From positions 150,007 to 214,006 of the IMG/VR virus record IMGVR_UViG_3300046787_000286: a DNA stretch of 64,000 nt; one strand, given 5' to 3'. Shown in pieces: positions 13,827 through 62,644 of this stretch (the first letter of the stretch is position 1; each line of letters begins with the position of its first letter). A program made the position numbers and the translations under genes. The notes below the pieces were generated by a model, which saw only the letters and a program-made list of their open reading frames with translations, was not told where the DNA came from and ran no database searches.

Positions 13827-14155
13827 AGTTGATCGGGCCAGTCACGGAACAGTGCATGCTGGATATCCCCTGCTACAAACTGGTTGAACGACTTGTGTTT
13901 TGTTTCGAGCTCGCCTTCTAGTGGTGCAACACGTTTGAACGCAGAGTCCATTTGCGCCATGTCCTTGAATTCCATGAGTATCATCCATTCAGGCATGTCA
14001 GCAATCGAACGGAATCCCATTTTGCATCTTGTGATACGATAGCTTTCCATACGACCTTCGGATACCAAATGATCAAAGAATCCCTTCATGCCATTTACCC
14101 ACTCGAGGTCAGAAATGTCGCCTTGTTTATTTGCCCAAATTGTATAAATGTCCAT
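13823..14155 (-). CDS. dimeric alpha/beta-barrel-type protein (DUF6614-like)
   Basis: MDIYTIW...YRITRCKMGF...MEFKDMAQMDSAF...FRDWP; family recalled from motif. Confidence 0.6.
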   Translation of the reverse strand: MDIYTIWANKQGDISDLEWVNGMKGFFDHLVSEGRMESYRITRCKMGFRSIADMPEWMILMEFKDMAQMDSAFKRVAPLEGELETKHKSFNQFVAGDIQHALFRDWPDQL

Positions 14156-14583
14156 TAGCAAGGTCCCAGTAGTTCGTAGCCGTCAAATTGTGCTTTGTAG
14201 TTGGCACTTTCGCCCAGGTACAAATACTTGTATCCTGATGATTTGTAATATGCACACTCATGTTCCAAGCTACGGCGACCTAGTTCCAGACTAGGGGTCT
14301 GATAGTCCCATGCAAATTGCATGCTCTCTACGTTGTATTCATCCCAGCGACGACATAAACTCCATGCAACAATTTGATCGTTGTGATAGTAAATGTGAAT
14401 ATCGTTTGCTTTGTCTTGAAACTGACTCAAGAAAAGTGGCATCACACTCATAAATTGTTTGTGAGCACAATACTGCCTATAAATCTGCTCAAACGGTTCT
14501 ACACTAGATGCCCAGGTCCATCTAGCTGTTTCAGGGTACTCATTATAGTTTGTATGAGCTAGTTTAATTCTACAAAATTTCAT
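14155..14583 (-). CDS. stand-alone ATE_C / Bpt-like aminoacyl-tRNA-protein transferase domain (GNAT fold)
   Basis: IYRQYC, WDY...LGRRSLEHEC..K..GYKYLYLG...YKAQF...E.L matches the ATE1/Bpt C-terminal signature. Confidence 0.72.
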   Translation of the reverse strand: MKFCRIKLAHTNYNEYPETARWTWASSVEPFEQIYRQYCAHKQFMSVMPLFLSQFQDKANDIHIYYHNDQIVAWSLCRRWDEYNVESMQFAWDYQTPSLELGRRSLEHECAYYKSSGYKYLYLGESANYKAQFDGYELLGPC

Positions 14584-15077
14584 TTTTCATAACGCCAAGT
14601 AACTACATCGTCTAGAGACTTTTGATCCCATGTATCATAGTAGCCTTGCGATTTTAATTTGTCTGCGGCATTATTTAACTTGCTTAATTTCTGAATTACT
14701 AAAAGCCCGCACAAACCAAAATTCATGTTTACTCGGTTAACATACTCTGGCGCATCGGGATGGTCTTCGAGTATAACATAGTTTATGGGTATTAGTGTTT
14801 GATTCATGTTACTAACCCATTCCTGCAAGGATACTGGATCAATTGTGCGGTGATCAAAACACACTACTACAACATCTTTATGTTCTAGCATGCTAATACT
14901 TTCACGAATTACATCTGAGAATTCAAACACTTCGCAAAATATTGTACTGATCATGTCAGACAGTCTTGCAGCTCGAGCATACGGACAAGGTGCCCAGTTG
15001 GCCAGATCAGGATGTTCGACTTCTACAAACTCGATCATCCATTGATCAAGTTCTGCCTTGATTTTTACTTGGTCCAT
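14580..15077 (-). CDS. DUF1415-like protein
   Basis: W..FVE...PCPYAR, DHP, C-terminal GYY..W. Confidence 0.55.
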   Translation of the reverse strand: MDQVKIKAELDQWMIEFVEVEHPDLANWAPCPYARAARLSDMISTIFCEVFEFSDVIRESISMLEHKDVVVVCFDHRTIDPVSLQEWVSNMNQTLIPINYVILEDHPDAPEYVNRVNMNFGLCGLLVIQKLSKLNNAADKLKSQGYYDTWDQKSLDDVVTWRYEK

Positions 15078-15391
15078 TACTTAAACAATATCAATGCCAT
15101 GCAACTAGCTTGTAGAATAAACCCAATACCGATTGTAATAATGTTAAGCATGTCTTTGAGTACAACTGCTCGCATAAACAACAAAATCAACCCACCCCAG
15201 AGAAACAGGATCATGTCTAGGCCAGGAGTCTTGTCGCTTAGACCCGACATCAGTGCTAGGAAGCTAGGCAGTGTTGCACAATGCAACACAATTGCTGATA
15301 GCCATCCCAGTGTGTCTGCTGAAAGTTTAGCAAGGCTGTCTGTAAGGAATTCACGGATAGCAATAATTGTCATTGGAAATTTAAAAGGCAT
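15077..15391 (-). CDS. 3-TM membrane protein
   Basis: Three hydrophobic segments; follows the cell-wall hydrolase. Confidence 0.7.
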   Translation of the reverse strand: MPFKFPMTIIAIREFLTDSLAKLSADTLGWLSAIVLHCATLPSFLALMSGLSDKTPGLDMILFLWGGLILLFMRAVVLKDMLNIITIGIGFILQASCMALILFK

Positions 15392-15393
15392 TG

Positions 15394-15966
15394 TTATGCT
15401 CCGTAAAAAATGTGACGACCAATTTTATCAATCTTGGGCTTTTTCCAACCTGGACTGACATAATCCGCATGGTAAAATAATGCTTCTTTAAGTCCCGGCA
15501 GTCGGAAGTTTTCTAGCAAAACTTTTTTAGCCACTTCCTCAGACTCTCGCCATAGTGGTGTATGCACTGGACGAACTTTATGTGTAGTTTCGCATACCCA
15601 GCTAAACTGACAGATCAGTTTTTCATATATAACATTCTTTTGATAAACAACTCCGCACACTGAATCAGCAAAGCGGCCGGATTCAACTCGGTTCATTGTT
15701 ACCTGGGCTACAGCTACTTTGCCTTCGAATGATTCCGATGCAGCTTCCCAATAAATGTTTCGTGTCAAGCAATCAAGTTGCTTGATTTTCTCTGTTGTAC
15801 TGACATAACCCGCGGGCATGCTTTCGATGTCAGAACGAAGATCGTTGAGTTTGTGGTTACTAACAGCAATAACTGCTAGTGCCACTAACCAAAGTCCGGC
15901 AGCTTTTAATGCTCGCGAACTCCACGTTGTAATTTGATTATTAATGTAGTTTACTTGTGCTTTCAT
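15394..15966 (-). CDS. cell wall hydrolase, SleB/CwlJ (Hydrolase_2) family, with N-terminal anchor
   Basis: CLTRNIYWEA.SE...VAQVTMNRV...VCGVVYQ...CQFSW...FYHADYV.P.W...IGRHIFY. Confidence 0.92.
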   Translation of the reverse strand: MKAQVNYINNQITTWSSRALKAAGLWLVALAVIAVSNHKLNDLRSDIESMPAGYVSTTEKIKQLDCLTRNIYWEAASESFEGKVAVAQVTMNRVESGRFADSVCGVVYQKNVIYEKLICQFSWVCETTHKVRPVHTPLWRESEEVAKKVLLENFRLPGLKEALFYHADYVSPGWKKPKIDKIGRHIFYGA

Positions 15967-16046
15967 GGTAGTTTTACTTACTCAATTGGACTACGAACCA
16001 GTGAGTTACTGGTTCAAACGAATGCTTTTTGTCGTTATGTTAGCCG

Positions 16047-16439
16047 TTAACGGTTATCTTTGTCTTGAGCTTGAAGTTTGTTCCAAGTTTCAAGTTTATC
16101 CTTGATTCGTTGTTCCAACTCACGATATTGGTTGCCCAACTCCCGGAGTTCTTCCCACTCAGATTCAAGTTTGTGATTTACCGTTAAGAGATTGATGCGC
16201 TCTTCGATGCGCTTTAACATTGTTACAAGGCTCTCGCCGTTGATCTCAATGTCGGCACCCTCGCCCTGCAAACTTATTTTACCTGATGGATTTACATTGA
16301 GTGGCGAGCTAATTCTATAGTCGACTCCAGAGGTAACCCAAGGCGATGCCATTGTGTATGATGTGCTTGACGCAGAACCTATTGTTAGATTAGCGTCAAG
16401 ACTTGAGAGCGATACTGTTGGTGATACAGTATAAGTCAT
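16047..16439 (-). CDS. hypothetical protein
   Basis: Ser/Thr-rich N-terminus, coiled-coil C-terminus. Confidence 0.7.
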   Translation of the reverse strand: MTYTVSPTVSLSSLDANLTIGSASSTSYTMASPWVTSGVDYRISSPLNVNPSGKISLQGEGADIEINGESLVTMLKRIEERINLLTVNHKLESEWEELRELGNQYRELEQRIKDKLETWNKLQAQDKDNR

Positions 16440-16640
16440 TTACTTTGCAGCCAATGCCTCTTTTTCAGCAGTGATTTCTTTGCGGCGTTCTTTAATGCCC
16501 TTGCTCATTTCTTGAAGAGCTTTGCGAGCGCGAGCTGCCGATGCCTTTACACCTTTTGCTGTAAACTTTTCGTTTTCGGCAATGTATGTTTCGTAAGCGG
16601 TAACAATTTGTTCGTGTTGTGTAGGTGTTGGTGATGTCAT
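16440..16640 (-). CDS. histone H1-like (Hc1-family) small basic protein
   Basis: ENEKF..KGVKASAARARKALQE...RRKEI; AAGGAG RBS; promoter at 16667-16694. Confidence 0.75.
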   Translation of the reverse strand: MTSPTPTQHEQIVTAYETYIAENEKFTAKGVKASAARARKALQEMSKGIKERRKEITAEKEALAAK

Positions 16641-16700
16641 AATATTCTCCTTGATAGACAAAAGTAATTATAACACTTTCCGCACACTTGTCAAATTTCT

Positions 16701-16970
16701 TTAGTCCAGATAGATATGACGTCTGCTCCAGGTGTCCCAGATCGTGACGTTACTCCAGCTTCCATTCCAAGTTACTTGAAAAAGATTTAGGCTGTTCTGA
16801 CTATAAAGACTCATCTTGTTGTTGGCCAAATGAACGTCCTGCTTGTTCTTGGTTGCCCAATTTTTTAGTAGTGCGTTGGCTTGTGAGTCTCGAAGAATTA
16901 TAATATACAGGGCTTCGCCTGACTTCGAATGGTATGTACTCATTGTTTTTATTTTACTTAGCACACTCAA
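16701..16970 (-). CDS. hypothetical protein
   Basis: 89-aa ORF. Confidence 0.55.
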   Translation of the reverse strand: MSVLSKIKTMSTYHSKSGEALYIIILRDSQANALLKNWATKNKQDVHLANNKMSLYSQNSLNLFQVTWNGSWSNVTIWDTWSRRHIYLD

Positions 16971-16987
16971 TTAAAAAGGCCAAAAGA

Positions 16988-17007
16988 AAAGCGGCCGAAG
17001 CCGCTTT
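16988..17007 (-). terminator. intrinsic terminator
   Basis: AAAGCGGC-TTCG-GCCGCTTT followed by a T-rich tract on the minus strand. Confidence 0.8.
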
Positions 17008-17027
17008 GTAGAAGAAGCACAAGCTGA

Positions 17028-17372: not shown

Positions 17373-17440
17373 TTTGTGTTGCCTTAAAAGTTGATTTAGA
17401 GAGTTAAAAAATGTTTTGCATTACTGCTCAACATATCAAT

Positions 17441-17469
17441 ATTATAGCAAAAGATGATATTTAGGTCAA
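17441..17469 (-). promoter_or_regulatory. sigma70 early promoter
   Basis: TTGACC-17-TATAAT. Confidence 0.85.
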
Positions 17470-17506
17470 CCATTTTCTGCAATAATTTTGATTTGGTTTG
17501 CCCGTT

Positions 17507-17635: not shown

Positions 17636-17729
17636 TCGATTTCCTTTTGCAGTTTTGATAAGTTAATTATACCAGATTTAGGGTTTTTCGTCAACCGTTT
17701 TTGTATAGAAAAAAGTTAGTACTTAACAC

Positions 17730-20035: not shown

Positions 20036-20044
20036 AACGATTCC

Positions 20045-20398: not shown

Positions 20399-20427
20399 TC
20401 GAACTCCTTTTGTTTCTGTATGTGTAT

Positions 20428-21045: not shown

Positions 21046-21048
21046 CAG

Positions 21049-47003: not shown

Positions 47004-48572
47004 ATGATGCGCGACTTACTTAACATTCTTGACAAAATAACCCTTACTGAAGGTGTGGGATTAACTAACCGTAAACCTGGCGAAAAATTCAAAAATCATG
47101 TGGATGACATTGTGTCGTACCAGAACATGGAATTTTATCCAGACTCAGGCCGATACGAAACCCCAGACGAACTAGCACAGGCCAAAACCTCAGTTGAGCA
47201 GTCTGGTAGAAACATACACTGGATCAATCAACCTAACTCATCAACTGGTGGATTCATGATTGCCACGTTCACTGGCGAAGATGGAAAAGAATATTATCTA
47301 GGCAAATGGGTCAAAGCAATTAGTCCAAACAAGGCCCTGAACAATTTTGCGCACAATGAGATTCCCGGTGGATTCAAGTTCCAAAGCAAGGCAGGGCAAA
47401 AGGAAAACTCTGGACTCAAGCCCAGTGAGTGGTTAGAGCAATATCAAAACAACACTCCACAAACAATTTTAGATCAAGCCCGCAAGGCATTTGGACCAGA
47501 CAGCGCAGAAGCTCAAGCACTGGCAACATTTATTAACGGAGATATTCCAGTGGAAGTTGCCCGTGGTAACATGAACGCTACTGCCTTCCGCGATTACTTT
47601 GCTGAGGTACTACAGCCTATTGCACTAGTGCTAGGTAAAAAAGTATCCGGTAATGCCGCAGAAGCGGCTCAAATCTTCTTTGGTCCAGGTGCTGATTACT
47701 CAGATTGTACAATTAGTTTCAACAACAATACCATTGGTGGCCTGTACGATTCCTTGTTGGTTAACCCCGAAGGTAAACAGATCAAGCTGTCGAGCAAAGG
47801 TAAAGATGGCGCTAACGCATCAGTTACTAACTTGATTAAATCTGTACAAGAACTTGAAAAAGTACCTGCAGGTAAAAAGCTCAAGGCCACATTTGCCGAA
47901 GAAATAGAAATGTTGACCAACATTGAAAAACTGGGACACTTCGGTGCTCCTATTGCTATTGCCGAAAAGTACGGAATTATCGACCAAGGCGACGGAGCAA
48001 GAGTTATGCAGTTAAAAAATCTGGGTCCCAACGATGATGTTACTGGTATCTTGAGCAAGAAGCTACAGGCGTTGTACAATGACCGCAAAGCCAAGGACAT
48101 GGGACGCATTATCCCGGCTGAACACATGATTGCTGCCATTGCTTACAAAGTTGCCGATTATGTTAACAAGAACACACGCTTTGGCGAAGCAGCTTCTTCT
48201 ATCCTAAACAACGCGGCACTGGTACAAATGTATACAAACACTACCGACACTGCTGATACAATTACTATTACTAAACTAGAAGCAGTATACCCATCGCAGA
48301 CAGTTACAGGTGTGCTGCTAGATGCTACCAAGGCTTACATGAGCACACAAGGCAAAGGTAACTTTACATTTAAGATCTTGAAGAATGGTGCCAAGCCAAC
48401 TGATGTAAACGACATCGACGGAATGGATAGTTTAGAAGAGCCCGGGGTAGATACATCTAATCCAGACGAGTTAGACGCTGCTACACAACGTAGAAGTTCT
48501 GTAAAAGCAGCTGGAGCAGCACCTGAGAAATTAGGGTCTAAACAAAGTTTAGGTAGAGCACGTCAACGCTGA
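47004..48572 (+). CDS. 522-aa protein with PD-(D/E)xK-like nuclease motif; probable late/virion protein
   Basis: FAEV..P...LYDS...IKLSSK; TAAGTA upstream; leader ending LTE. Confidence 0.6.
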   Translation: MMRDLLNILDKITLTEGVGLTNRKPGEKFKNHVDDIVSYQNMEFYPDSGRYETPDELAQAKTSVEQSGRNIHWINQPNSSTGGFMIATFTGEDGKEYYLGKWVKAISPNKALNNFAHNEIPGGFKFQSKAGQKENSGLKPSEWLEQYQNNTPQTILDQARKAFGPDSAEAQALATFINGDIPVEVARGNMNATAFRDYFAEVLQPIALVLGKKVSGNAAEAAQIFFGPGADYSDCTISFNNNTIGGLYDSLLVNPEGKQIKLSSKGKDGANASVTNLIKSVQELEKVPAGKKLKATFAEEIEMLTNIEKLGHFGAPIAIAEKYGIIDQGDGARVMQLKNLGPNDDVTGILSKKLQALYNDRKAKDMGRIIPAEHMIAAIAYKVADYVNKNTRFGEAASSILNNAALVQMYTNTTDTADTITITKLEAVYPSQTVTGVLLDATKAYMSTQGKGNFTFKILKNGAKPTDVNDIDGMDSLEEPGVDTSNPDELDAATQRRSSVKAAGAAPEKLGSKQSLGRARQR

Positions 48573-49135
48573 GTTAGGTCTGAAATGTAATTGCAGATTC
48601 TCAATTGAACTGCTTCTTCTGCACTAAGGTAAACATCTTGTGGAGGAAGCAGTTTTTCTTTTATAGTTTTTTCGTCTAGTCCAGTTGCCAACTTGTAATG
48701 TGCTAGCATGCGTTCGTGAACTAAATTAAACTCTTTTGTAACTGCCCATAGTTCGTGGTGCTTGCCTTCGCTTCCCCAGGAGTACTGGTGGCTTAGTATA
48801 CTGGTATTTGGTGTTAATATGCGGGGCTTGCCTGCTAAGAATATCATCAATCCTGCTGATGCAATTTGCCCTAGTCCCACAGTTTTAACAGGAATCAAGC
48901 TGCTTCGTATTACATCGATTAGTGCAAATGCAGATTCGAGCTCCCCGCCTGAGCTGCAAATCATTAACAGTAATTCTTTTTTCTTCTTTTTAACCACATG
49001 ATTCTCTGCCAGAATCCACTCTATAATAGGCTGTATTGACTCTTCGTCAACTTCGCCCATGAAGACATACATCCCGTTGTCTTGCAGTTGTTCCGAATGT
49101 GATCTTGATTCTGGTAGGTCTTTTTCTTGTGGCAT
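48563..49135 (-). CDS. clpP: ClpP protease subunit
   Basis: ICSSGG, GQIASAG (Ser), SHQ (His), DVYLSAEEA (Asp). Confidence 0.92.
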   Translation of the reverse strand: MPQEKDLPESRSHSEQLQDNGMYVFMGEVDEESIQPIIEWILAENHVVKKKKKELLLMICSSGGELESAFALIDVIRSSLIPVKTVGLGQIASAGLMIFLAGKPRILTPNTSILSHQYSWGSEGKHHELWAVTKEFNLVHERMLAHYKLATGLDEKTIKEKLLPPQDVYLSAEEAVQLRICNYISDLTQR

Positions 49136-49170
49136 AATAAGTAACCGGTTACCCAATTACTTATCATGTA

Positions 49171-53743: not shown

Positions 53744-53815
53744 TGTTAATTCCTTAAGACAAACTATTTATAAGGTACCATTAACCACCTACTAAATAAA
53801 ATCGGAGGATATCAC

Positions 53816-54085
53816 ATGATACGATTTTTTAAAAACTTATTCAAAGGCAAGGAACCTATTCCTGCGCCCGAAGCACCTTACAAGGTAGAAACGCCAGTTA
53901 CTAAAGTTGCCGCAGTAAATGCACAACCTGTTGTTGCCGAGGTAGTAACTGCCAAGGCTGTTACCAAGGCACCTGCTAAGAAACGCACGTTTGTTAAACG
54001 TGAAGAAGGTGGCGTTGCCAAAGTAGCACCTGTCAAAGCAAAGCCCAAGGCACCTGCAAAACCCAAGGCACCTAAAGCAAAATAA
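53816..54085 (+). CDS. Lys/Ala/Pro-rich low-complexity protein
   Basis: TAAATA and GGAGG upstream; APYKVETP, KAPAKPK repeats. Confidence 0.7.
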   Translation: MIRFFKNLFKGKEPIPAPEAPYKVETPVTKVAAVNAQPVVAEVVTAKAVTKAPAKKRTFVKREEGGVAKVAPVKAKPKAPAKPKAPKAK

Positions 54086-54107
54086 AAAGCCCCGAAAGGG
54101 GCTTTTT
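54084..54107. terminator. bidirectional intrinsic terminator
   Basis: AAAAAGCCCC-GAAA-GGGGCTTTTT between convergent genes. Confidence 0.9.
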
Positions 54108-54409
54108 TATTGAAATATCATTCTGGCTAGTGCTACACTATCTATGCTGACTAACAAGAAGTAGTTGGCTAACATACCTAGACTCTTTCGTGTCCATGCC
54201 GCCCATGCAAAGATAACGCATTGTGTAATGAACAATGGGTATAGGATCAAGAAAGGCGGATTAGGAACAGTTAGCATCATAGTAAATGAGCATCCGATAC
54301 TCAAGAACCATGCCAAGATTTCTAATCCACAACGTAGAGGATTACTGCGCCAGTCCTCCCGTATCCATGCAACAATATTAAGCAGTAAATTGTTCATACA
54401 GTTGTTCAC
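54107..54409 (-). CDS. 3-TM membrane protein
   Basis: Hydrophobic segments, PPFL.LYP. Confidence 0.7.
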   Translation of the reverse strand: MNNCMNNLLLNIVAWIREDWRSNPLRCGLEILAWFLSIGCSFTMMLTVPNPPFLILYPLFITQCVIFAWAAWTRKSLGMLANYFLLVSIDSVALARMIFQ

Positions 54410-55400
54410 TTGCTAGATTCTTGCTCTTGGCCTCGCACTGAATATCAAAGTTGTCAGCAAAGCCTAACACCCAGTCATTACAAGCTGTATTCCACATCAT
54501 ATCAGAGTGTGCGCGGAGCTTTTGCTTTTTAAAACCTCCAGCAAGAAGTTGATCAAGGTCTGGTCGAACTCCTGTATCATGACCAACCAAAACATCTTCG
54601 CGGCTAACAGAGTAGTGAAGAGTAGGACGCTGGTCGCGCCAAGACTCAATAACCCGCATCGTGCGAGCGTCCTTGGGATCGATGTACTCGCCGGAATTAA
54701 TCCAATGGTGGTGAACGTCCAGAACAAGAGCAACATGCTCAGCCACAAGTAAAGTACTATCAAGTCCATTTGTCATCTCGTCGTTTTCGATGGAAATTAA
54801 GTTCCTGGCCTCTGGAGTGAGACGACCTAGTGTCTTCAGGAATTTAGTGGCACCACCTTTGCCACTCAAATGCACGTTTATTTTAAATCCATGATCATGC
54901 CAACTTGAACCGTAACCCATCCAGCGAGCCATGTCCGCGTGATACTCAAATTCGAGTATCGAACGTTCCACGATGTCGTCGGACTCACTAGCCAGTACAC
55001 AGAATTGCCCAGGGTGAAACGACAATCGAACACCAAGTTCTCGAGCACGAGCACCAATCGGAGCAAAGATTCGGGCACAGTGATCTTGAACATCTTGCTG
55101 TTGCCAAAACGGAATCCAATCTTCATGTGTGTATCCTTGTAGCATTTCTGAGCCCAGGCGCACCATGCGGCGGCCTTCGGGCATGGCACCCACACGTTCC
55201 ACCATAAGCAGAGCCGCACGAGCATTGTGATTCATAATGTCCCACTGACGCTGTTCTGCTTCGCTCTTGTGTTCGCGAAGCCAGCGCATTGTAGTAGAAC
55301 GCCCGTTTAGTTCACGGCTCTCAACTGTGGGCTTGCGACCCGCAGTTTCAGAGGGATGATCGAGCCATTTGCAGCAAAAGCCAATTCGAGGTGTATTCAT
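54378..55400 (-). CDS. uvsE: UV-damage endonuclease (predicted leaderless)
   Basis: RIGFCC, RLSFHPGQF, INVH, IENDE, LDVHHH, HYS, HSD, EAKSK; TTGACA-17-TATAAT at 55407-55435. Confidence 0.93.
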   Translation of the reverse strand: MNTPRIGFCCKWLDHPSETAGRKPTVESRELNGRSTTMRWLREHKSEAEQRQWDIMNHNARAALLMVERVGAMPEGRRMVRLGSEMLQGYTHEDWIPFWQQQDVQDHCARIFAPIGARARELGVRLSFHPGQFCVLASESDDIVERSILEFEYHADMARWMGYGSSWHDHGFKINVHLSGKGGATKFLKTLGRLTPEARNLISIENDEMTNGLDSTLLVAEHVALVLDVHHHWINSGEYIDPKDARTMRVIESWRDQRPTLHYSVSREDVLVGHDTGVRPDLDQLLAGGFKKQKLRAHSDMMWNTACNDWVLGFADNFDIQCEAKSKNLASEQLYEQFTA

Positions 55401-55417
55401 GATGTAATTATACAACA

Positions 55418-55972
55418 TTACGAAAATTGTGTCAACACGTTATCTAACTTGTCAAACAACAAATTTGGTAAATCTTTGAACATTTTTTCAATTTGATCTG
55501 GGTGGTCCAAAATAACCCATTGGATTGTAGGGTTATCTTTTACAAGATGTAATACATATTGCTTATAATTGTGCCACTTATGGATAGCCAATTTATCTGT
55601 GCCAAGATCCTTGGGCTGCAAATCAAACCCAACTAACAATACAATATCGCTATTAGAAGTTGACAAGTGCATACTCACAATATCATCTGGATGGTCTACT
55701 ATTTCGTGAAAGTCACCTTGATATAACTTAACACCCGGTGGCCTACCAATTGACTGATATGCAGAATTAGGCACATACAAATTGCATCTTGTATGGAAAC
55801 TTCTATTAACTAAATCCTGTGCCTCTGGCTCGGAGTGACATATGACATTGTCAGTTGCGTAACTGCGCCAGGTGCGCCAGCCACCCCAAAATGGACCAAC
55901 GCTTTTGAGTCGTTCTATATCTATAGTTGGATGTATAGTTGCAGCATCGGCTAGTACCCAGGATATTTTCAT
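55418..55972 (-). CDS. Maf/DUF115-like or sialyltransferase-fold protein (degenerate)
   Basis: G..WG.....S..TDNVIC ... IVLLVGFDL pattern. Confidence 0.45.
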   Translation of the reverse strand: MKISWVLADAATIHPTIDIERLKSVGPFWGGWRTWRSYATDNVICHSEPEAQDLVNRSFHTRCNLYVPNSAYQSIGRPPGVKLYQGDFHEIVDHPDDIVSMHLSTSNSDIVLLVGFDLQPKDLGTDKLAIHKWHNYKQYVLHLVKDNPTIQWVILDHPDQIEKMFKDLPNLLFDKLDNVLTQFS

Positions 55973-57231
55973 TCAACTGCCTTGATTAATTTCCATTTAA
56001 ACCCGCCCAAGCATTGCCACGCAAACACCGGGTTCTCAACAGTAGGGTTAGCATTAAAAACAATATCACCTTTGGTTCCAGAATAGTTCGGAACTTCGGT
56101 TCCGTGACTGACTTTATGAATTCCCACTTGCAATTGCTTGATTGATGTAAGGCCAACATCACTAATTTCAATAGCAGGGGTTTTGTTAACGCCGATCGAC
56201 AATGCTTGTTTTCTAGTTGTGCCAATGAATCCAGTTTGGTTTTTAAATTTACCAGCAGAAATAGTAACTTCTTCATCCCATATACTCAGTGCCATGTCCG
56301 GATCAGCAGTATTGATACCAACACGTCTTTTTGTAACACTCATTGTTTCAGCTAAGTTAGTTTCGCCTGTTACTGTTAATTTTGATAGCACACCAACTGA
56401 CTGTAAATTACTTTCCGTGATAGTACGTGCTAATTTACCCGAATCAACCAGCAGCTCTCCGCTGATTTTAACTTTATCAAAATCAATTCCTTGATCTGTA
56501 ATAGCTTCTTTAACTTGCTTTACTAATGATTCTTTCCACTTAGCATCAAGTTTTTCAAATGTTTTTGTACCAACATTGTTTGCTAGCTCTTGCCAGGCGT
56601 AGTTGTCTGTATTGATAGACCCTTTGACTACCAGGTCCTTGACAGTCAATGAGTTTACAGCCGAAATATCTTTTGCTGTGAAATTGTTTTCAACTACAAC
56701 ATGAGCATCAAGCACTGTTAGCTCAACTGATTCTGAGTTAGACTGTATTCCTTTAAAGACTGAGGTGTTTAGATTTTTTACAGTCTCTTCTATGCTTTGT
56801 TTGATGATAGGACGAATATCAGTGCTTGACAAACTTGCCAACACACGTTGAGTGGCATGTTGATTGACCACTGTTTCAATTTTTTCAAGCCACACAGGAT
56901 CTAATGTTAGTTCTGAAATAGCTTGCTTAATCAAATCCTGTGTACTGTCATTAATGCTACGAGTAATAAATCCGTAATCAATATATTGGGCCAATCCAGG
57001 AATCTTGCCACTGTGAAACAAGTCCTTTACTGAGGACTTAACTGCATCAATGAGCTCTGGCATTGCTTCGCTGTTAGCAAACTTTGCAACAACTCGATCT
57101 TGAATAAACTTAATAGCATCTGCTTCTACAGTCTTGAGCCATTCTTCAGACATTGTTTGCTGGATTTTATCAGCAACTTCTTTTTTAACTTGTTGTTCAA
57201 CTAATTGTTGTAATGCATTGGAATCAAGCAT
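55969..57231 (-). CDS. helical N-terminus plus fibre-like beta C-terminus, probable virion-associated protein
   Basis: SNLQSVGVL, RVGINT.DP, KGDIVFN..P....W.CLGG..W. Confidence 0.6.
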   Translation of the reverse strand: MLDSNALQQLVEQQVKKEVADKIQQTMSEEWLKTVEADAIKFIQDRVVAKFANSEAMPELIDAVKSSVKDLFHSGKIPGLAQYIDYGFITRSINDSTQDLIKQAISELTLDPVWLEKIETVVNQHATQRVLASLSSTDIRPIIKQSIEETVKNLNTSVFKGIQSNSESVELTVLDAHVVVENNFTAKDISAVNSLTVKDLVVKGSINTDNYAWQELANNVGTKTFEKLDAKWKESLVKQVKEAITDQGIDFDKVKISGELLVDSGKLARTITESNLQSVGVLSKLTVTGETNLAETMSVTKRRVGINTADPDMALSIWDEEVTISAGKFKNQTGFIGTTRKQALSIGVNKTPAIEISDVGLTSIKQLQVGIHKVSHGTEVPNYSGTKGDIVFNANPTVENPVFAWQCLGGFKWKLIKAVE

Positions 57232-58144
57232 GTTCTCTCCATAAATCTAACGTAACACAATGAAATCCGCCGCCCAGTGTACGACTGTGACGTAGTGTTA
57301 GAGGAATAACCGTGAATCCCCGTTTCTCCAAACTAGCGTGAAGCCCTGTTTGTTGAGCGTCACATATAACAGTTTGGGGGTCCACAACGAGCATATTAAG
57401 GGCGATCCATTTACTAGCATACGGGTACTGGTAAAAATCTTGAGGTTCAACGTCATCCACATAAATCTTCTCCCAATCCTGGAAAACTCTTGGACAATTT
57501 TCTTCTGTAACTCGGCTTCCATTTAATAATACCAACCCTTCTCTCAAAGGAACAATTGTGCTGTCAATATGCACACCTGCATAGAAGTTGCACAGCTCAA
57601 TTTTAACATCAGGCAATATATTACACAACCAATCGTATGCAGCCCGATTACCCGACGACGACTCCAAGAATAGCATTTTGTCTTTGCCTAGTCGACACAC
57701 ATTAGCAGCATCTAACACAAAGCCTTCGTTACGTGGCATAAAATGATACTGGGTTGCTGCATCAACAATATCGTGGTAACATTGCAATTCCATGTCACGA
57801 CAAGGATACATCATGGCAGGATTTACAATAGTATCTCCATGTACAAGCAATCGGTCACGAGGGCAATAATTGTACAGGCCATCATGCACCTGAAAGTTTA
57901 AAGGATCTGGACGAACTACATCTACCCCAAGACTGACCAATGTACTACATAACTTTTGTAGGTCCTGTTCAGTTTCGTCAATAATCCACTGAGGTACCGG
58001 ACCGCTCGGTAACGGAGTTTCTTTCCATAACGTGTTTTGTTCTTCTGCTCTAAATATTTTGTCATGTACTGGCCAATTTGCATGCTCGGCTGTTCCTACA
58101 ACAACCTTTTTAAGTGGATCCCACTCGTTATAACTTGATATCAT
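57224..58144 (-). CDS. amidinotransferase (glycine / inosamine-phosphate amidinotransferase family)
   Basis: NEWDPLKKVVVG, CPRD, DAAN, HIDST, GGGFHCVTLD (catalytic Asp/His/Cys). Confidence 0.92.
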   Translation of the reverse strand: MISSYNEWDPLKKVVVGTAEHANWPVHDKIFRAEEQNTLWKETPLPSGPVPQWIIDETEQDLQKLCSTLVSLGVDVVRPDPLNFQVHDGLYNYCPRDRLLVHGDTIVNPAMMYPCRDMELQCYHDIVDAATQYHFMPRNEGFVLDAANVCRLGKDKMLFLESSSGNRAAYDWLCNILPDVKIELCNFYAGVHIDSTIVPLREGLVLLNGSRVTEENCPRVFQDWEKIYVDDVEPQDFYQYPYASKWIALNMLVVDPQTVICDAQQTGLHASLEKRGFTVIPLTLRHSRTLGGGFHCVTLDLWREHA

Positions 58145-58659
58145 ATATGCCCTGTAATCTGAAGAGTATATCTATCTTCTATCCCAATGTTTGCAGCCAT
58201 ATGTGGCTCATCATATACCCATTCAACGGTATCTCCTGCACGCCAACATGTGTATGGTTTTCCTGCCACTTCGAGATAGTGTCCGGATTTCCAATCTTCC
58301 AACAACACTAACGAACGTCTAATAGTTGTTTCTTTGCCTTGTAAATTAAACAGCTCAATATACCGCTTGTATAGGTCTCTATGAACTGGCATCACTGTGC
58401 CAGTTGGCATACGATAAAACGCAAGCCCGACATCTTGCCAGCCTTGCTGTTCGTATATGTTAATAAACGTCTTTGCCCAGGCAGGTAATCGATGGCGCAT
58501 ATCGCACAGGTCACCAGTAATTTTATTTTGGTAACCTTGCGAGATCCAGAGTTCAACACTGCTTGGATCATTGAACGGTTCCTGGATGTAATCTAATGTT
58601 TTAAACTCATCATCCCAAAACCGTTCTATACGATATTTAAGCGGCACGTGTATTGCCAT
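58141..58659 (-). CDS. 2OG-Fe(II) oxygenase (Asp/Asn hydroxylase-like)
   Basis: MPVHRD (HxD), PHMAAN, RYTLQITG. Confidence 0.8.
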   Translation of the reverse strand: MAIHVPLKYRIERFWDDEFKTLDYIQEPFNDPSSVELWISQGYQNKITGDLCDMRHRLPAWAKTFINIYEQQGWQDVGLAFYRMPTGTVMPVHRDLYKRYIELFNLQGKETTIRRSLVLLEDWKSGHYLEVAGKPYTCWRAGDTVEWVYDEPHMAANIGIEDRYTLQITGHI

Positions 58660-59878
58660 AGTGGACAACTTCGATCTTGTCTGTTGATTTGAGTTTGCGC
58701 CATGGGTCAACAATCATTGACCCATCTGGGATAGCACAATACGGCTGTGTCTTGTCTTGGTCGCCTGTGTATTCGTAAGTAATTTGGCGGTCATGTGCCC
58801 ACAAGATGATGCTTGCTTGTTCAATGCTGTCAACTACTTTATCCTTGTTATCAGCTAGTGGATCAATATAAACAACTGACTTGCCTTCTTGCTCAATATA
58901 ATGACCTACCAATGTTGAGTAACTACCGATACAGTACTCAACATCTGGCTTGTATGCTTTGCCATGGATCACAATCGGCATGTTATCGTGCATCACACTC
59001 AAGTCCAGCAAGAACATTGCAAGGTTCTTTGCTTGGATTTCACGAGCATGCATAACTGTGTCGAACAAGTCGTAACCAATGTTGTATTCCTGTGCTAGCC
59101 AACGTAGAGCAATATTGTCTCGTGGGTGGCAAGCACCTGCATCGCCCATGCCAGCAGTCATGTACTTGGGTCCCATGATACGCATAGTGCTTCGTGCCAA
59201 GGCATTTGTAACAACATCAACATCGATATTACCAATACGCAAAGCAAAGTCTTGAATCATGTTCACTAAGCCAACTTTAGCACTGATGAATGTGTTGTAA
59301 AAGATTTTAATTGCTTCGCATTCGTCCCAGGTGCCAATTTCGTAGCGAGGATTGTTCTGCATAACAGTATCATACAATGCACGAAGCTCACCTGCTAATG
59401 CATTAGGATTTCCGTCCTCGGTACCAATCATAATCATCTCAGGATTAACCATGTCCCACTTAACTGATCCCATAGCAATCAAATAAGGGTTGTACAAGAA
59501 TTGATGTTTCTTGTCCAGCAACGGGTAAAAGTGTTTGCGAGTTGTGCCTGGTAATACTGTAGAGATTAGTACAACTTTTTTAGAGTCTTTGGCATATTTG
59601 TTAATGTTGTTAATAGCATCGAGCACAGCATCTCGGCCAAAATCTCGTGGTTCCATGTGCGAGCTAGGGACTGATCCGTCATATCCTTCTGCATGCGGAG
59701 TTGGCACAGCGATAAAAATCCATTCGCTTTCGTTCACAAGCTCTTCAATCTCACAAACTTTTACCGAGTCGCTTGTGCGTGGGTAAATATCGTAGCCCCA
59801 AACTTCGTGCTTTTCTGCCATAACTTCAGCGCAATCGAGGCCAAGTTTTCCAATTCCAATAAAACCAATTTTTGACAT
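58637..59878 (-). CDS. ugd: UDP-glucose/GDP-mannose dehydrogenase family
   Basis: GIGKLG, IAVPTP, STVLPGT, K..YN.F, GACHPRD, YKP. Confidence 0.88.
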   Translation of the reverse strand: MSKIGFIGIGKLGLDCAEVMAEKHEVWGYDIYPRTSDSVKVCEIEELVNESEWIFIAVPTPHAEGYDGSVPSSHMEPRDFGRDAVLDAINNINKYAKDSKKVVLISTVLPGTTRKHFYPLLDKKHQFLYNPYLIAMGSVKWDMVNPEMIMIGTEDGNPNALAGELRALYDTVMQNNPRYEIGTWDECEAIKIFYNTFISAKVGLVNMIQDFALRIGNIDVDVVTNALARSTMRIMGPKYMTAGMGDAGACHPRDNIALRWLAQEYNIGYDLFDTVMHAREIQAKNLAMFLLDLSVMHDNMPIVIHGKAYKPDVEYCIGSYSTLVGHYIEQEGKSVVYIDPLADNKDKVVDSIEQASIILWAHDRQITYEYTGDQDKTQPYCAIPDGSMIVDPWRKLKSTDKIEVVHYGNTRAA

Positions 59879-59881
59879 ATT

Positions 59882-61171: not shown

Positions 61172-61525
61172 TTATCGTTCAACTACACCGTCCCAGTCGT
61201 CGCTGGGTTCGTTGTCAACGTACTCTTGAATTCTTGTGCGAAGGATATCATAAAATGTATCTACTTCATGACCCCAAAATCCAGTCAGATGCTCCAATGC
61301 CTGAATGCAATAGTTCCAATCGCGCTTTTTATATTCAGCCAGTAAATTGCTGTGCAAATTTTTCATGCTCTCGAGTTTTGGCATGTCTAGGATAGGCATG
61401 GATTCAATTACGCAGAATGCAGTAATTTCAGTGTTTGTAGGCTTTACTCTAATTGTGTCTAGCTCTAACACAGTATATCTTTCACCAAGTGCTAATGCCT
61501 GGTCTCTTCCAAAAATTATGTTCAT
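61172..61525 (-). CDS. C-terminal fragment of a class III adenylate/guanylate cyclase with TPR-like tail
   Basis: LELDTIRVK...Y...DW......FY..L..RI.EY...P..WDGV. Confidence 0.55.
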   Translation of the reverse strand: MNIIFGRDQALALGERYTVLELDTIRVKPTNTEITAFCVIESMPILDMPKLESMKNLHSNLLAEYKKRDWNYCIQALEHLTGFWGHEVDTFYDILRTRIQEYVDNEPSDDWDGVVER

Positions 61526-61550
61526 CTCTTAATCCTTTTAAATATGTATC

Positions 61551-62339
61551 ATGGAATTTACTTTTGATTTAATTTCTGACTTACATGTCGAAACCTGGGA
61601 CAAATTTGACTGGACCAATCAGGCCACCAGTCCTTACTGTGTTGTTGCAGGTGATGTAAGTACAGATAGAAAACGGTTAACAGAGACCCTAAAACATTTG
61701 GGTAGCTGTTACCAGGGTGTGTTTTACATCGACGGCAATGATGAGCACAGAAATAATTTAGAGAACCTAGGGCAAAGTTACAAAGACCTAAGTCACTATG
61801 TTGATAAGTTTAAAAATGTAGTGTTTATGCAAGACAATGTGGTAGTAATCAATGGTGTTGCATTCTTGGCTGCAAATGGGTGGTATAGTTTCGACCTTGA
61901 CCCTAGTGTTGATTACATAAAGAGCACCGAGTGGTTTACCGAACGCTACGGGGTAAATTCAACTGTTGCTCCTGTTGTTTCGAACTTAGCAATTACTGAT
62001 GCAGCGTACTTAAAAAACAGTGTTCGTAAACTACAAATGCATCGAGATGTCAAAGCTATTGTCATGGTCACACATACTGTACCAGATTACCGGTTAGTGT
62101 CACATGATCTAGAGTTAGAAAATCACTACAGAATGAACACTACTGGAAATCCTCACTTGCAGATTGCATTAGACGAAGATTCTGAAAATAAAATCAAGGC
62201 TTGGTGTTTTGGACATTATCATAGATCAATTGATCGTACTATTGACGGCATCCGTTATGTAAACAACTGCAAAGGAAGGGGTAATACACCCTGGAGTCAG
62301 GCAGCATATTACCCCAAACGAATTACAATAAATTTTTAA
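61551..62339 (+). CDS. calcineurin-like metallophosphoesterase
   Basis: ISDLH, AGD, DGNDEH, THTVP, FGHYH. Confidence 0.88.
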   Translation: MEFTFDLISDLHVETWDKFDWTNQATSPYCVVAGDVSTDRKRLTETLKHLGSCYQGVFYIDGNDEHRNNLENLGQSYKDLSHYVDKFKNVVFMQDNVVVINGVAFLAANGWYSFDLDPSVDYIKSTEWFTERYGVNSTVAPVVSNLAITDAAYLKNSVRKLQMHRDVKAIVMVTHTVPDYRLVSHDLELENHYRMNTTGNPHLQIALDEDSENKIKAWCFGHYHRSIDRTIDGIRYVNNCKGRGNTPWSQAAYYPKRITINF

Positions 62340-62644
62340 ATAGTGTCAGGTCTGATTTCGATTTGCAAAGGATAATTTTGTTTCCTTGCGCTATGCAAAA
62401 CTTCGTGACCTTTTTGTTCTGCAATTTCAAATGGCAATACTGCTACAGTAGCTTGCCCGCCTGTGTGAATGTCTTCGGTAATCTTGAGTGCTGTCTCAGT
62501 ACTGTAATCAAAAAATTCAATCAAACTTTCAATTACAAATTCCATAGTAGTTTGGTTGTCGTTTAAGTAAATGACCTTGAACATCGAAGGTTCCTTGATC
62601 GACTCGTTGATTTTAATTTTTGTTGCGGCGTCAGCTTGCGACAT
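62336..62644 (-). CDS. clpS: ClpS N-degron adaptor
   Basis: FKVIYLNDNQTTMEFVI..L...IHTGG...EIAEQK...YPL. Confidence 0.93.
   Translation of the reverse strand: MSQADAATKIKINESIKEPSMFKVIYLNDNQTTMEFVIESLIEFFDYSTETALKITEDIHTGGQATVAVLPFEIAEQKGHEVLHSARKQNYPLQIEIRPDTI

What the first reader, a model, noticed from the sequence alone, without database searches (positions are those of the whole stretch)
14155..62644. Possible phage-encoded N-degron pathway: ATE/Bpt-like transferase, ClpS and ClpP
Seen: a stand-alone 142-aa protein with the ATE_C signature (14155-14583), an intact-looking ClpS (62336-62644) and a ClpP with Ser/His/Asp triad (48563-49135). Established: bacterial Bpt and L/F-transferases add destabilising N-terminal residues from aminoacyl-tRNA, and ClpS delivers such substrates to ClpAP. 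Inference: the phage could write and read its own degrons to destroy host or defence proteins. Caveats: the genes are unlinked, the ATE_N half is missing and no ClpA-type ATPase lies in this window.
Basis: partly seen in the sequence, partly recalled or inferred. Interest (0 to 1): 0.72.

Follow-up and report, generated by a model that had tools for sequence, protein, structure and literature searches.

The report
Phage arginine-chemistry cassette, plus separate Clp genes
The three genes are real, but the small arginyltransferase-like protein belongs to a conserved virus-only gene cassette with arginine-modifying enzymes. It is not a demonstrable partner of the phage's own ClpS-ClpA-ClpP protease, so a phage "write and read your own degron" pathway is not supported as proposed.

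Summary
All three ORFs exist and match their families: ATE_C 25.0 bits (exactly at cut-off), ClpS 83 bits, and ClpP 81 bits with a Ser/His/Asp triad.

The window is the end of a 214-kb fragment of a roughly 345-kb jumbo phage. Outside the window that fragment also encodes a true ClpA with an IGF loop, a canonical ClpP, DnaJ, 36 tRNAs and a permuted tmRNA. The "reader" half is therefore complete, and it is already known in kind for jumbo phages.

The "writer" half is not supported. The 142-aa protein is a genuine, virus-only homologue of the Ate1/Bpt catalytic GNAT domain:
- **Kept:** Ate1's Tyr-Lys pair, Trp260 and the acidic Glu of the arginine pocket.
- **Missing family-wide:** the ATE_N zinc site, the pocket for acidic N-termini and the basic tRNA helix.

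Its gene neighbours point away from the clp genes:
- In 77 of 80 related loci it sits beside a DUF6875/DUF1415-like protein (thiolate-heme "P422"/AglA-like fold).
- It usually also sits with DUF6614 and an amidinotransferase homologue.
- It is never beside clp genes, which lie 12-126 kb away.
- Longer relatives occur in complete phage genomes without ClpS.
- Cultured phages with ClpS and ClpA lack it.

Best reading: a tRNA-dependent, arginine-centred tailoring cassette whose acceptor is unknown.

The parts
14155..14583 (-). 'ATEC': stand-alone 142-aa Ate1/Bpt-type GNAT domain, the donor-side catalytic half only
   Evidence: Pfam ATE_C 25.0 bits. Profile hits only ATE1 in the PDB. AF2 pLDDT 92.9. 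Top 30 Swiss-Prot folds are all Bpt, residues ~63-226. VIA-align top hits are the C-terminal GNAT of MprF/aaPGS, FemX and Sba18. R5, W92, Y129 and K130 are invariant in 81 sequences; E109 is in 76 of 81.
14580..15077 (-). 'U165': DUF6875/DUF1415-like protein, candidate thiolate-heme oxygenase, overlapping ATEC by 4 bases
   Evidence: Adjacent to ATEC in 77 of 80 loci. AF2 pLDDT 95.4, four-stranded sheet flanked by helices. Only standout PDB match is AglA 9ub3, Z 7.6 against 4.2 for the next. AFDB and Atlas neighbours are DUF1415/DUF6875. Weak DUF6875 hits in 17 of 25 members. Invariant Cys31-Pro32 compares with the P422 heme motif RxGxVCP.
13823..14161 (-). DUF6614 protein (ferredoxin-like alpha+beta barrel, Dabb/ABM/EthD-like), overlapping ATEC's end; the true start is probably the ATG at 14155
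   Evidence: Pfam DUF6614 79 bits. Next to ATEC in 57 of 80 loci and up to 94% identical. Atlas structural neighbours are Dabb, ABM, EthD and HapK.
16667..16694 (-). Consensus sigma-70-like promoter site that could drive 16661..13823, including the cassette
   Evidence: TTGACA-16-TATAAT, 12 of 12 matches, with an extended TG. A pattern match only.
62336..62644 (-). ClpS adaptor with a near-intact N-degron pocket
   Evidence: Pfam ClpS 83 bits. Alignment to E. coli ClpS structures. Pocket and ClpA-contact residues conserved in 81 phage homologues; D36 is replaced by N or S.
48563..49156 (-). Divergent second ClpP isoform with a Ser100/His123/Asp174 triad
   Evidence: CLP_protease 81 bits. 24% identical to the phage's canonical ClpP with the triad aligned. 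All PDB matches are ClpP proteolytic subunits. PHROG hits are split between ATP-dependent protease and head-maturation protease.
57224..58144 (-). Distant amidinotransferase-like paralogue inside a five-gene overlapping operon
   Evidence: BLASTP E 3e-10 to the cassette amidinotransferase homologue of locus L099. No Pfam hit. The main cassette homologue 'X328' lies outside the window at G000:133575-134561 (-).

Best explanation
The 142-aa protein is the catalytic, donor-binding GNAT domain of the Ate1/Bpt lineage, reduced to a single domain and found essentially only in viruses. I infer that it takes an aminoacyl group with a basic side chain, most likely arginine from Arg-tRNA, and transfers it to an amine. 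I also infer that it does this within a co-transcribed, virus-specific cassette, not as a general N-degron writer.

The cassette has four parts:
- the transferase;
- a small DUF6875/DUF1415-like protein with the fold and Cys-Pro motif of thiolate-heme amino-acid hydroxylases (cytochrome P422; AglA, which N-hydroxylates an arginyl conjugate made by a tRNA-dependent GNAT);
- a DUF6614 alpha+beta barrel;
- usually an L-arginine amidinotransferase homologue, which in this genome lies 30 kb away.

The likeliest output is a tailored arginine-derived conjugate. A small molecule or one dedicated peptide or protein site seems more likely than arbitrary protein N-termini.

ClpS, ClpA and the two ClpPs form a separate, complete phage-encoded protease system of a kind already reported in jumbo phages.

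Shown: homology, the conserved residues, the gene linkage and the distribution. Inferred: the tRNA donor, arginine specificity, heme binding, and the nature of the acceptor and product.
For: Homology and fold. Structural neighbours are enriched in aminoacyl-tRNA-dependent transferases (MprF/aaPGS, FemX, Sba18/Sbb17, ATE1).

Residue mapping onto klAte1 (alignment, mutagenesis in PMC9351520, counts):
- Y303/K304 correspond to Y129/K130, invariant in 81 of 81.
- W260 corresponds to W92, 81 of 81.
- E277, the essential acidic residue for the Arg side chain (Gln in Bpt), corresponds to E109, 76 of 81.
- S273 (Ala in Bpt) corresponds to S/T105, 81 of 81.
- The beta4-alpha3 loop reads like Ate1's SLGK-S, not the acetyl-CoA motif Q/RxxGxG/A.

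Cassette linkage:
- U165 is next to the gene in 77 of 80 loci, DUF6614 in 57 and X328 in 36. Gene order and strand are shuffled but linkage is kept.
- The same trio surrounds a 37%-identical long-form relative.
- X328 homologues occur in 17 of 21 records that carry the gene.

Partner identities:
- X328's nearest solved relatives are all true amidinotransferases (AGAT E 1e-9, StrB1, SxtG, HsvA), with the GGxHC catalytic Cys and the His kept.
- U165 matches AglA at Z 7.6 as the lone standout.
- DUF6875 is the thiolate-heme P422 family with motif RxGxVCP.
- AglA biology comes from PMC12866846.

Other support:
- The family is virus-only: 1 hit (a 6-kb MAG contig) in 185,579 species genomes.
- The phage carries three tRNA-Arg genes.
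Against: - No biochemical data exist for any member.
- The basic helix that is essential for tRNA binding in klAte1 (K112/K115/K119/R120/K123) has no counterpart. The family is slightly acidic (median pI 6.1, net charge -2), so aminoacyl-tRNA use is not assured.
- Only two to three of the four Arg-pocket positions are Ate1-like. Position 87 is A, C or S, and position 121 is Leu as in Bpt.
- The U165-AglA link is structural only. Z 7.6 is below the tool's safe line of 8, and HMMER finds no link. Pfam DUF6875 hits are all below cut-off.
- Complex prediction for ATEC with U165 gave no answer.
- In long-form loci U165 is detected in only 25 of 80.
- Guilt by association cannot tell a small-molecule acceptor from a protein acceptor.
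Confidence: 0.5

Rival explanations
1. ATEC adds a destabilising residue (Arg or Leu) from aminoacyl-tRNA to protein N-termini. Phage ClpS then hands these proteins to phage ClpA-ClpP, giving the phage a private N-degron pathway against host or defence proteins.
For: - ATEC is a true Ate1/Bpt homologue with the catalytic Tyr-Lys pair and an acidic donor pocket.
- The genome encodes ClpS with a conserved pocket, ClpA with an IGF loop, and two ClpPs.
- All four genomes of this roughly 340-kb clade that are at least 81% complete and carry one of the two genes carry both: G017, G020 and G021 with the short form, and G036 with a long-form relative plus ClpS.
- The count of 6 of 19 fragments with ClpS equals what universal presence would predict (summed completeness 6.2).
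- By my recollection, bacterial ClpS does not read N-terminal Arg as a primary degron in E. coli. The phage ClpS carries a family-wide D36-to-N/S change that could alter specificity.
Against: - The ATE_N acceptor pocket (R80, Y25, Y87), the Zn site and the tRNA helix are absent.
- The genes are never neighbours: 12-126 kb apart, with variable spacing.
- Co-occurrence is confined to one clade, so it is co-inheritance.
- Long-form relatives occur in complete genomes lacking ClpS, and G037, the one also checked for ClpP, lacks that too.
- Cultured phages with ClpA and ClpS lack the family.
- The tight, order-independent linkage is to arginine-tailoring enzymes instead.
Confidence: 0.12
2. ATEC arginylates a specific protein or peptide (host target, virion protein or small precursor peptide). 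The heme protein and amidinotransferase homologue then edit that arginine's guanidino group. The result is a post-translational modification system with a non-proteolytic role such as counter-defence or takeover.
For: - The residue and cassette evidence is the same as for the best explanation.
- Ate1 family members act on proteins.
- An amidinotransferase homologue was detected in a cyanophage virion proteome (PMC12801897).
- The cassette shares a promoter-like site with lysis-type genes.
- A 44-aa anti-Druantia protein was loosely annotated as DUF6614. This is a very weak lead.
Against: - No acceptor-binding domain is recognisable.
- The characterised relatives of the partner enzymes named here (AglA, P422, AGAT, StrB1, SxtG) act on free amino acids or small conjugates.
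- No candidate precursor peptide gene was looked for or seen.
Confidence: 0.15
3. ATEC is not tRNA-dependent. It has drifted into an acyl-CoA (or other activated acyl) N-acyltransferase, or into a non-catalytic GNAT scaffold, and the ATE_C similarity reflects ancestry only.
For: - The Pfam score is only at cut-off.
- There is no basic tRNA-binding helix, and the family is acidic overall.
- Foldseek and VIA lists also contain CoA-dependent tandem GNATs: VipF, NMT, MshD and MAB_4324.
Against: - Sequence profiles hit only arginyltransferases in the PDB.
- The Tyr-Lys pair typical of Ate1/FemX-type aminoacyl-tRNA transferases is invariant, and the pocket Glu is conserved.
- The acetyl-CoA pyrophosphate motif is absent (alignment).
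Confidence: 0.18

Closest known systems
Eukaryotic Ate1 arginyl-tRNA-protein transferase (klAte1 7WFX, ScATE1 7TIF/8E3S)
   Same: - Homologous GNAT core; the only PDB family hit by sequence profile.
- Equivalents of W260, S273, E277, Y303 and K304 are conserved, which implies a basic (Arg-like) aminoacyl donor.
   Different: - 142 aa against about 500.
- No ATE_N Zn/Fe-S site, no R80/Y25/Y87 acidic-N-terminus pocket, no basic alpha3 tRNA helix and no C-terminal domain.
- Y289 is replaced by Leu.
Bacterial Bpt (Asp/Glu leucyltransferase) of the Leu/N-degron pathway
   Same: - Best structural match: all 30 top Swiss-Prot models, covering Bpt residues ~63-226.
- Leu at the fourth pocket position, as in Bpt.
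   Different: - Lacks Bpt's first ~65 residues.
- The pocket has Glu where Bpt has Gln189 and Ser/Thr where Bpt has Ala185.
- Found in viruses only, and linked to different genes.
Argolaphos pathway pair AglC (tRNA-dependent GNAT Arg ligase) and AglA (YqcI/YcgG thiolate-heme guanidine N-hydroxylase)
   Same: - A GNAT aminoacyl transferase homologue encoded beside a small protein whose only notable PDB fold match is AglA.
- Both systems centre on arginine.
- An invariant Cys is placed for heme ligation.
   Different: - No sequence-level relation to AglA was detected.
- The similarity of ATEC to AglC was not tested because no AglC sequence was available here.
- No phosphonate genes are present.
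- The phage cassette adds an amidinotransferase homologue and DUF6614.
Cytochrome P422 (formerly DUF6875) thiolate-heme amino-acid oxygenases
   Same: - Weak Pfam DUF6875 hits in 17 of 25 U165 members.
- The same four-stranded sandwich architecture.
- Cys-Pro at the heme-ligand position.
   Different: - Scores are below the Pfam cut-off.
- The RxGxV part of the motif and the Trp-binding motifs are not evident.
- The substrate here is presumably not tryptophan.
Phage-encoded Clp components in jumbo phages (Iyer et al. 2021, PMC7824862; PA5oct, Atu_ph07, Phosso)
   Same: ClpS, ClpA and ClpP (and ClpX in relatives) encoded by a jumbo phage; ClpA is 39-41% identical to those of cultured jumbo phages.
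   Different: This clade combines ClpS, ClpA, two ClpPs, DnaJ, GroEL, HSP20 and a permuted tmRNA in one genome. Its ClpS has a family-wide D36-to-N/S change.

Membership tests
Ate1/Bpt aminoacyl-tRNA-protein transferases | ATE_C GNAT core homologous to the family | tested here: met
   Pfam 25.0 bits at cut-off. Profile hits only ATE1 in the PDB, E 4e-4 and 6e-9. Top 30 structural matches are Bpt.
Ate1/Bpt aminoacyl-tRNA-protein transferases | ATE_N domain with a Cys4 Zn/Fe-S site | tested here: not met
   No ATE_N hit in the protein or the 214-kb genome fragment. The protein starts at the last strand before the GNAT. Long forms have an N-extension but no Cys cluster.
Ate1/Bpt aminoacyl-tRNA-protein transferases | Positively charged pocket for an acidic N-terminal residue (klAte1 R80, Y25, Y87) | tested here: not met
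   These residues lie in klAte1 1-109, upstream of the region the phage protein covers (Foldseek range). Long forms keep 'GW' but not the following basic residues. I recall the canonical motif as GWRRSG; this was not checked with a tool.
Ate1/Bpt aminoacyl-tRNA-protein transferases | Catalytic or tRNA-3'-end Tyr-Lys pair (klAte1 Y303, K304) and W260 | tested here: met
   Y129, K130 and W92 are invariant in 81 of 81.
Ate1/Bpt aminoacyl-tRNA-protein transferases | Aminoacyl side-chain pocket (Ate1 S255/S273/E277/Y289; Bpt A/A/Q/L) | tested here: inconclusive
   The phage family has A/C/S, S/T, E (76 of 81) and L. This is a hybrid, but with Ate1's essential acidic residue.
Ate1/Bpt aminoacyl-tRNA-protein transferases | Basic helix binding the tRNA acceptor stem (klAte1 K112, K115, K119, R120, K123) | tested here: not met
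   Residues 9-28 carry no basic cluster. Family median pI is 6.1 and net charge -2.
Ate1/Bpt aminoacyl-tRNA-protein transferases | Transfer of an amino acid from aminoacyl-tRNA to a protein N-terminus | not testable with these tools
   Needs an enzyme assay.
Acetyl-CoA-dependent GNAT acetyltransferases | Motif A pyrophosphate loop Q/R-x-x-G-x-G/A between beta4 and alpha3 | tested here: not met
   The loop reads P97-x-L-x-L-G102-x-x-S105, like Ate1's SLGK-S. The motif definition is from general knowledge.
ClpS N-recognin | ClpS fold, N-degron pocket residues (E. coli N34, D35, D36, T38, M40, H66) and ClpA N-domain contacts (E79, K84; residue roles from memory) | tested here: met
   Pfam 83 bits. 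The N, D, T, H, E and K equivalents are invariant in 81 phage ClpS sequences. M40 is Met in 70 of 81. D36 is never Asp: N in 70, S in 10, T in 1. Binding specificity is untested.
ClpA unfoldase | Clp_N plus two AAA+ modules, pore loops, a ClpP-docking IGF/L loop and no ClpB middle domain | tested here: met
   747 aa with Clp_N, AAA, AAA_lid_9, AAA_2 and ClpB_D2-small. Walker A and B in both modules, KYR, GYVG, and IGF at 608. Outside the window at G000:126988-129231.
ClpP peptidase | Ser-His-Asp triad in the ClpP fold | tested here: met
   S100, H123 and D174 align with the canonical phage ClpP. All PDB hits are ClpP.
Thiolate-heme sandwich-fold oxygenases (P422/DUF6875; YqcI/YcgG such as AglA) | Four-stranded sandwich fold with a conserved Cys(-Pro) heme ligand | tested here: inconclusive
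   AglA Z 7.6, lone standout. DUF6875 hits below cut-off in 17 of 25 members. Invariant C31-P32 compares with RxGxVCP. Residue-level superposition and heme binding were not tested.
Amidinotransferases (AGAT/StrB1 type, GME superfamily) | Catalytic Cys in a C-terminal GGxHC motif, plus His | tested here: met
   GGMHCITVD aligns with AGAT GGFHCWTCD, and the His aligns with the His of AGAT's HIDATF segment. Solved matches below E 0.001 are AGAT, StrB1 and SxtG; HsvA matches at E 0.004. No Pfam hit reached threshold.

The most novel reading that the evidence does not exclude
A large, virus-exclusive enzyme family (at least 1,000 IMG/VR contigs counting short and long forms) uses host or phage Arg-tRNA to build an arginine-derived product. 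A thiolate-heme oxygenase and an amidinotransferase then tailor that product, for example into an N-hydroxy- or otherwise edited guanidino compound, or a site-specific protein arginylation mark. This would be a previously unrecognised tRNA-dependent natural-product or PTM pathway carried by jumbo and T4-like phages of aquatic bacteria, possibly serving takeover or counter-defence.
Probability: 0.3. Interest if true: 0.85.

Novelty: new variant of a known kind. Interest (0 to 1): 0.6.

Why it matters
If the cassette works as inferred, phages would be diverting charged tRNA into non-ribosomal arginine chemistry. Until now that has been seen in actinomycete antibiotic pathways and in eukaryotic or bacterial N-degron enzymes.

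The family is abundant in environmental viruses. It is absent from all 50,697 deposited phage records searched, and I found no mention of it in the paper library. It is a clean target for biochemistry: four small soluble proteins.

Separately, the genome shows that one jumbo-phage clade carries ClpS, ClpA, two ClpPs, chaperones and a tmRNA (relatives add a ClpX-like gene). That makes phage-controlled proteolysis directly testable, with the tmRNA a better-founded degron writer than the ATE_C protein.

Tried and rejected
- **Complex prediction of ATEC with U165.** Score 0.00 and no verdict, so it counts neither for nor against.
- **HMMER profile of U165 against PDB sequences.** Only chance-level hits, and no AglA.
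- **Atlas fold search of U165.** It returned only its own DUF1415/DUF6875 neighbourhood.
- **Fetching canonical Bpt sequences for a residue-level N-terminal alignment.**
  - A profile search with the long form found only family members.
  - "Relatives" are not available for a virus record.
  - I first thought invariant R5 might equal klAte1 R80. I dropped this because the paper places R80 upstream of Cys95/96, before the region the phage protein covers.
- **megablast and tblastn of both forms against GenBank phages.** No match.
- **U165 as the "missing ATE_N half" supplied in trans.** Rejected: its fold is unrelated to ATE_N, and it has a single invariant Cys, not a Cys4 site.
- **Druad1 (anti-Druantia) as a DUF6614 relative.** At 44 aa against about 110 aa it is too short to be meaningful.
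- **The window ClpP as a prohead protease.** Not excluded by PHROGs, but its best NCBIfam and PDB matches are cellular-type ClpP subunits.

Full report
**Context.** The window is bases 150,007-214,006 of a 214,006-bp IMG/VR virus record that CheckV rates 62% complete. That implies a jumbo phage of roughly 345 kb. Related records reach 340-344 kb, and one has terminal repeats. No deposited phage genome resembles it at the DNA level.

**Checking the observation.** All three ORFs are present on the minus strand.
- The 142-aa ORF (14155-14583) hits Pfam ATE_C at 25.0 bits, exactly the gathering score. ClpS (62336-62644) scores 83 bits. The ClpP-like ORF (48563-49156) scores 81 bits.
- The ClpP-like protein is only 24% identical to a canonical ClpP found elsewhere in the genome, but Ser100, His123 and Asp174 align with that protein's triad. 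Its nearest solved relatives are all ClpP subunits.
- The borderline ATE_C hit is real. A profile of 23 family members hits only arginyltransferases among 177,635 PDB sequences (klAte1 E 4e-4). The long-form profile reaches E 6e-9.
- A confident AF2 model (pLDDT 92.9) is a complete single GNAT fold. Its 30 best Swiss-Prot structural matches are all bacterial Bpt, covering Bpt residues ~63-226.

The rest of the record encodes:
- a 747-aa ClpA with Clp_N, two AAA+ modules, KYR and GYVG pore loops and an IGF ClpP-docking loop;
- a canonical ClpP at 268 bits and a DnaJ;
- 36 tRNAs, including three tRNA-Arg, and a permuted tmRNA (Rfam RF04321, 91 bits against a cut-off of 47).

The window itself adds HSP20 and what reads by eye as a GroEL C-terminus. 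Near-complete relatives also carry a ClpX-sized AAA_2 gene 1-3 kb from ClpS.

ClpS keeps the residues that E. coli ClpS uses. N34, D35, T38 and H66, and E79/K84 (which I recall as the ClpA-contact residues), are invariant in 81 phage homologues. M40 is Met in 70 of the 81. D36 is always N, S or T.

So the phage has a full ClpS-ClpA-ClpP system. That is known in kind: Iyer et al. 2021 list ClpP, ClpS, ClpA and ClpX in jumbo phages (PMC7824862). PA5oct-like, Atu_ph07 and Phosso phages carry both ClpA and ClpS.

**The ATE_C protein itself.** It belongs to a family of 140-155-aa proteins present on at least 495 IMG/VR contigs.
- A sister "long form" of 225-275 aa is on at least 541 more, many of them T4-like marine myovirus contigs.
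- Neither form matches any of 50,697 deposited phage records.
- Only one 6-kb MAG contig matches among 185,579 prokaryotic species genomes.
- The family is therefore effectively virus-only and unstudied. My literature searches found nothing on it.

**Residue mapping onto klAte1.** I mapped the family onto klAte1 using the HMMER alignment (the chain numbering is native plus 4). I then read the mutagenesis in Kim et al. 2022 (PMC9351520) against residue counts in 81 family members.

| klAte1 feature | Phage family | Count |
|---|---|---|
| Y303, K304 | Y129, K130 | 81 of 81 |
| W260 | W92 | 81 of 81 |
| E277 (sole charged residue of the Arg pocket; E277K inactive; Gln in Bpt) | E109 | 76 of 81 |
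| S273 (Ala in Bpt) | S/T105 | 81 of 81 |
| S255 | A, C or S at position 87 | mixed |
| Y289 | Leu121, as in Bpt | 71 of 81 |

Absent from the phage family:
- the ATE_N domain, meaning the Zn site C23/C26/C95/C96 and the R80/Y25/Y87 pocket that binds the acidic N-terminal residue of the substrate;
- the basic alpha3 helix (K112, K115, K119, R120, K123), whose charge is essential for tRNA binding.

The family is slightly acidic (median pI 6.1).

VIA-align ranks the C-terminal GNAT of MprF/aaPGS, FemX and the tRNA-dependent peptide synthases Sba18/Sbb17 at the top (Z 13-15). CoA-dependent tandem GNATs appear alongside them.

The protein is thus the donor-side catalytic half of an aminoacyl-tRNA transferase, with an Arg-type pocket. 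It lacks the parts that define N-terminal Asp/Glu recognition.

**Gene neighbourhood.** This was the most informative evidence.
- In 80 related loci, the upstream 165-aa gene (U165, window 14580-15077, overlapping by 4 bases) is present in 77. The downstream DUF6614 gene (13823-14161) is present in 57. A roughly 330-400-aa gene (X328) is present in 36. Order and orientation are shuffled but linkage is preserved.
- In this genome X328 lies 30 kb away, outside the window.
- A 37%-identical long-form relative keeps the X328-ATEC-U165 trio.
- X328 homologues occur in 17 of 21 ATEC-bearing records.
- A perfect sigma-70-like site at 16694-16667 could drive the whole minus-strand run. This is a pattern match only.

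**Identity of the partners.**
- *X328.* It ends in GGMHCITVD. Its matches among solved structures are true amidinotransferases: human AGAT at E 1e-9, StrB1, SxtG, and HsvA more weakly (E 0.004). The catalytic Cys and His are aligned, and the Atlas neighbours agree.
- *U165.* It folds confidently (pLDDT 95.4) into a four-stranded sheet flanked by helices. Foldseek finds no PDB match. An exhaustive VIA search gives one standout: AglA (9UB3), Z 7.6 over 146 of 165 residues, with the next hit at 4.2.
- *What AglA is.* It is a YqcI/YcgG thiolate-heme enzyme (Cys44) that N-hydroxylates the guanidine of AMPn-Arg (PMC12866846). I recall, but did not confirm in the text I read, that this substrate is made by the tRNA-dependent GNAT AglC.
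- *U165 relatives.* They are DUF1415/DUF6875 proteins. DUF6875 has just been characterised as "cytochrome P422": thiolate-heme amino-acid hydroxylases with the same sandwich architecture and a heme motif RxGxVCP (bioRxiv 10.64898/2025.12.11.692455). U165 has an invariant Cys31-Pro32 at the start of a helix.
- *DUF6614.* It is a Dabb/ABM/EthD-like barrel.

Three of the four cassette members therefore point to amino-acid chemistry, specifically arginine or guanidino chemistry.

**Co-occurrence with clpS.**
- Among 19 long ATEC-bearing records, 6 have ClpS. The summed CheckV completeness is 6.2, so this fits ClpS being present in every full genome of this clade.
- All four records of this clade that are at least 81% complete have both genes: G017, G020 and G021 carry the short form and ClpS, and G036 carries a long-form relative and ClpS.
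- That is one clade, and the genes lie 12-126 kb apart.
- Among 16 ClpS-bearing relatives only the two most complete contain ATEC.
- Outside the clade the association fails in both directions. Long-form relatives are present in complete genomes of 203, 151 and 64 kb that have no ClpS. G037, the only one of these also checked for ClpP, lacks that too. Cultured ClpA/ClpS phages lack the family.
- In the same 19 records X328 is found in 15, against 6 for ClpS.

The proposed "writer" lacks the acceptor and tRNA-binding parts of Ate1/Bpt. It is wired to an arginine-tailoring cassette and not to the clp genes. I put about 0.5 on a tRNA-dependent, arginine-centred tailoring pathway with an unknown acceptor, probably a small molecule or one dedicated site. 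The rivals are:
- 0.12 for the N-degron model;
- 0.15 for a non-proteolytic protein modification;
- 0.18 for loss of tRNA dependence.

If the phage does write degrons, its tmRNA is the better-supported writer, although no SmpB was found in the 214 kb held.

**Limits.**
- Every functional statement about the cassette is inferred from homology and linkage.
- The AglA match is below the tool's Z 8 comfort line.
- Complex prediction gave no answer.
- The genome is incomplete.

Noticed in passing
outside the window: G000:75405-75850 (-), within the tRNA block G000:59069-77194: The phage encodes a permuted (two-piece) tmRNA (ARAGORN; Rfam RF04321 at 91 bits against a cut-off of 47, with a weaker betaproteobacterial tmRNA match) among 36 tRNA genes. 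No SmpB was found in the 214 kb held. Together with ClpA and ClpP this is a plausible phage-controlled C-terminal degron system.
   Followed up: partly
outside the window: G000:126988-129231 (ClpA), 129281-130069 (DnaJ), 108552-109154 (ClpP); window 62714-63220 (HSP20), 63243-63992 (GroEL-like, cut by the record end): There is a full proteostasis suite in one phage genome. Related near-complete genomes add a roughly 406-aa AAA_2 (ClpX-sized) gene 1-3 kb from ClpS. In this record that position would lie beyond the contig end. The GroEL call is by eye only.
   Followed up: partly
window 13823-14161 (-) and loci L019-L098: DUF6614 is far better conserved (up to 94% identity) than its neighbours ATEC and U165 (about 30-60%) in the same loci. 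This suggests a constraint such as a tight interaction. A 44-aa anti-Druantia protein (Druad1) was loosely annotated as DUF6614 in a preprint, but it is too short to count as a member.
   Followed up: partly
window 13232-13741 (-): A 169-aa protein has a RelA/SpoT-type HD_4 domain (43 bits). It may be a small alarmone (ppGpp) hydrolase. It has its own promoter-like site at 13798-13770.
   Followed up: no
window 15077-15966 (-): A SleB-like cell-wall hydrolase (Hydrolase_2, 88 bits) and a 104-aa hydrophobic protein lie directly upstream of the cassette in the same apparent transcription unit.
   Followed up: no
window 55418-59878 (-): Five overlapping genes include a distant amidinotransferase-like paralogue (57224-58144) and a UDP-glucose/GDP-mannose dehydrogenase (58637-59878); three have no Pfam hit. 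Related genomes carry several amidinotransferase-like paralogues each.
   Followed up: partly
window 52568-55418 (-): An FAD-dependent oxidoreductase of the DAO family (212 bits) and a UvdE UV-damage endonuclease (100 bits) are encoded by the phage.
   Followed up: no
window 62336-62644 (-) and loci L104-L183: In all 81 phage ClpS sequences the position of E. coli D36 is Asn, Ser or Thr and never Asp, while the rest of the pocket is invariant. This is a possible shift in N-degron specificity.
   Followed up: partly
window 33536-37540 (+): A 1334-aa ORF, the largest in the window and on the opposite strand to most genes, was not examined.
   Followed up: no
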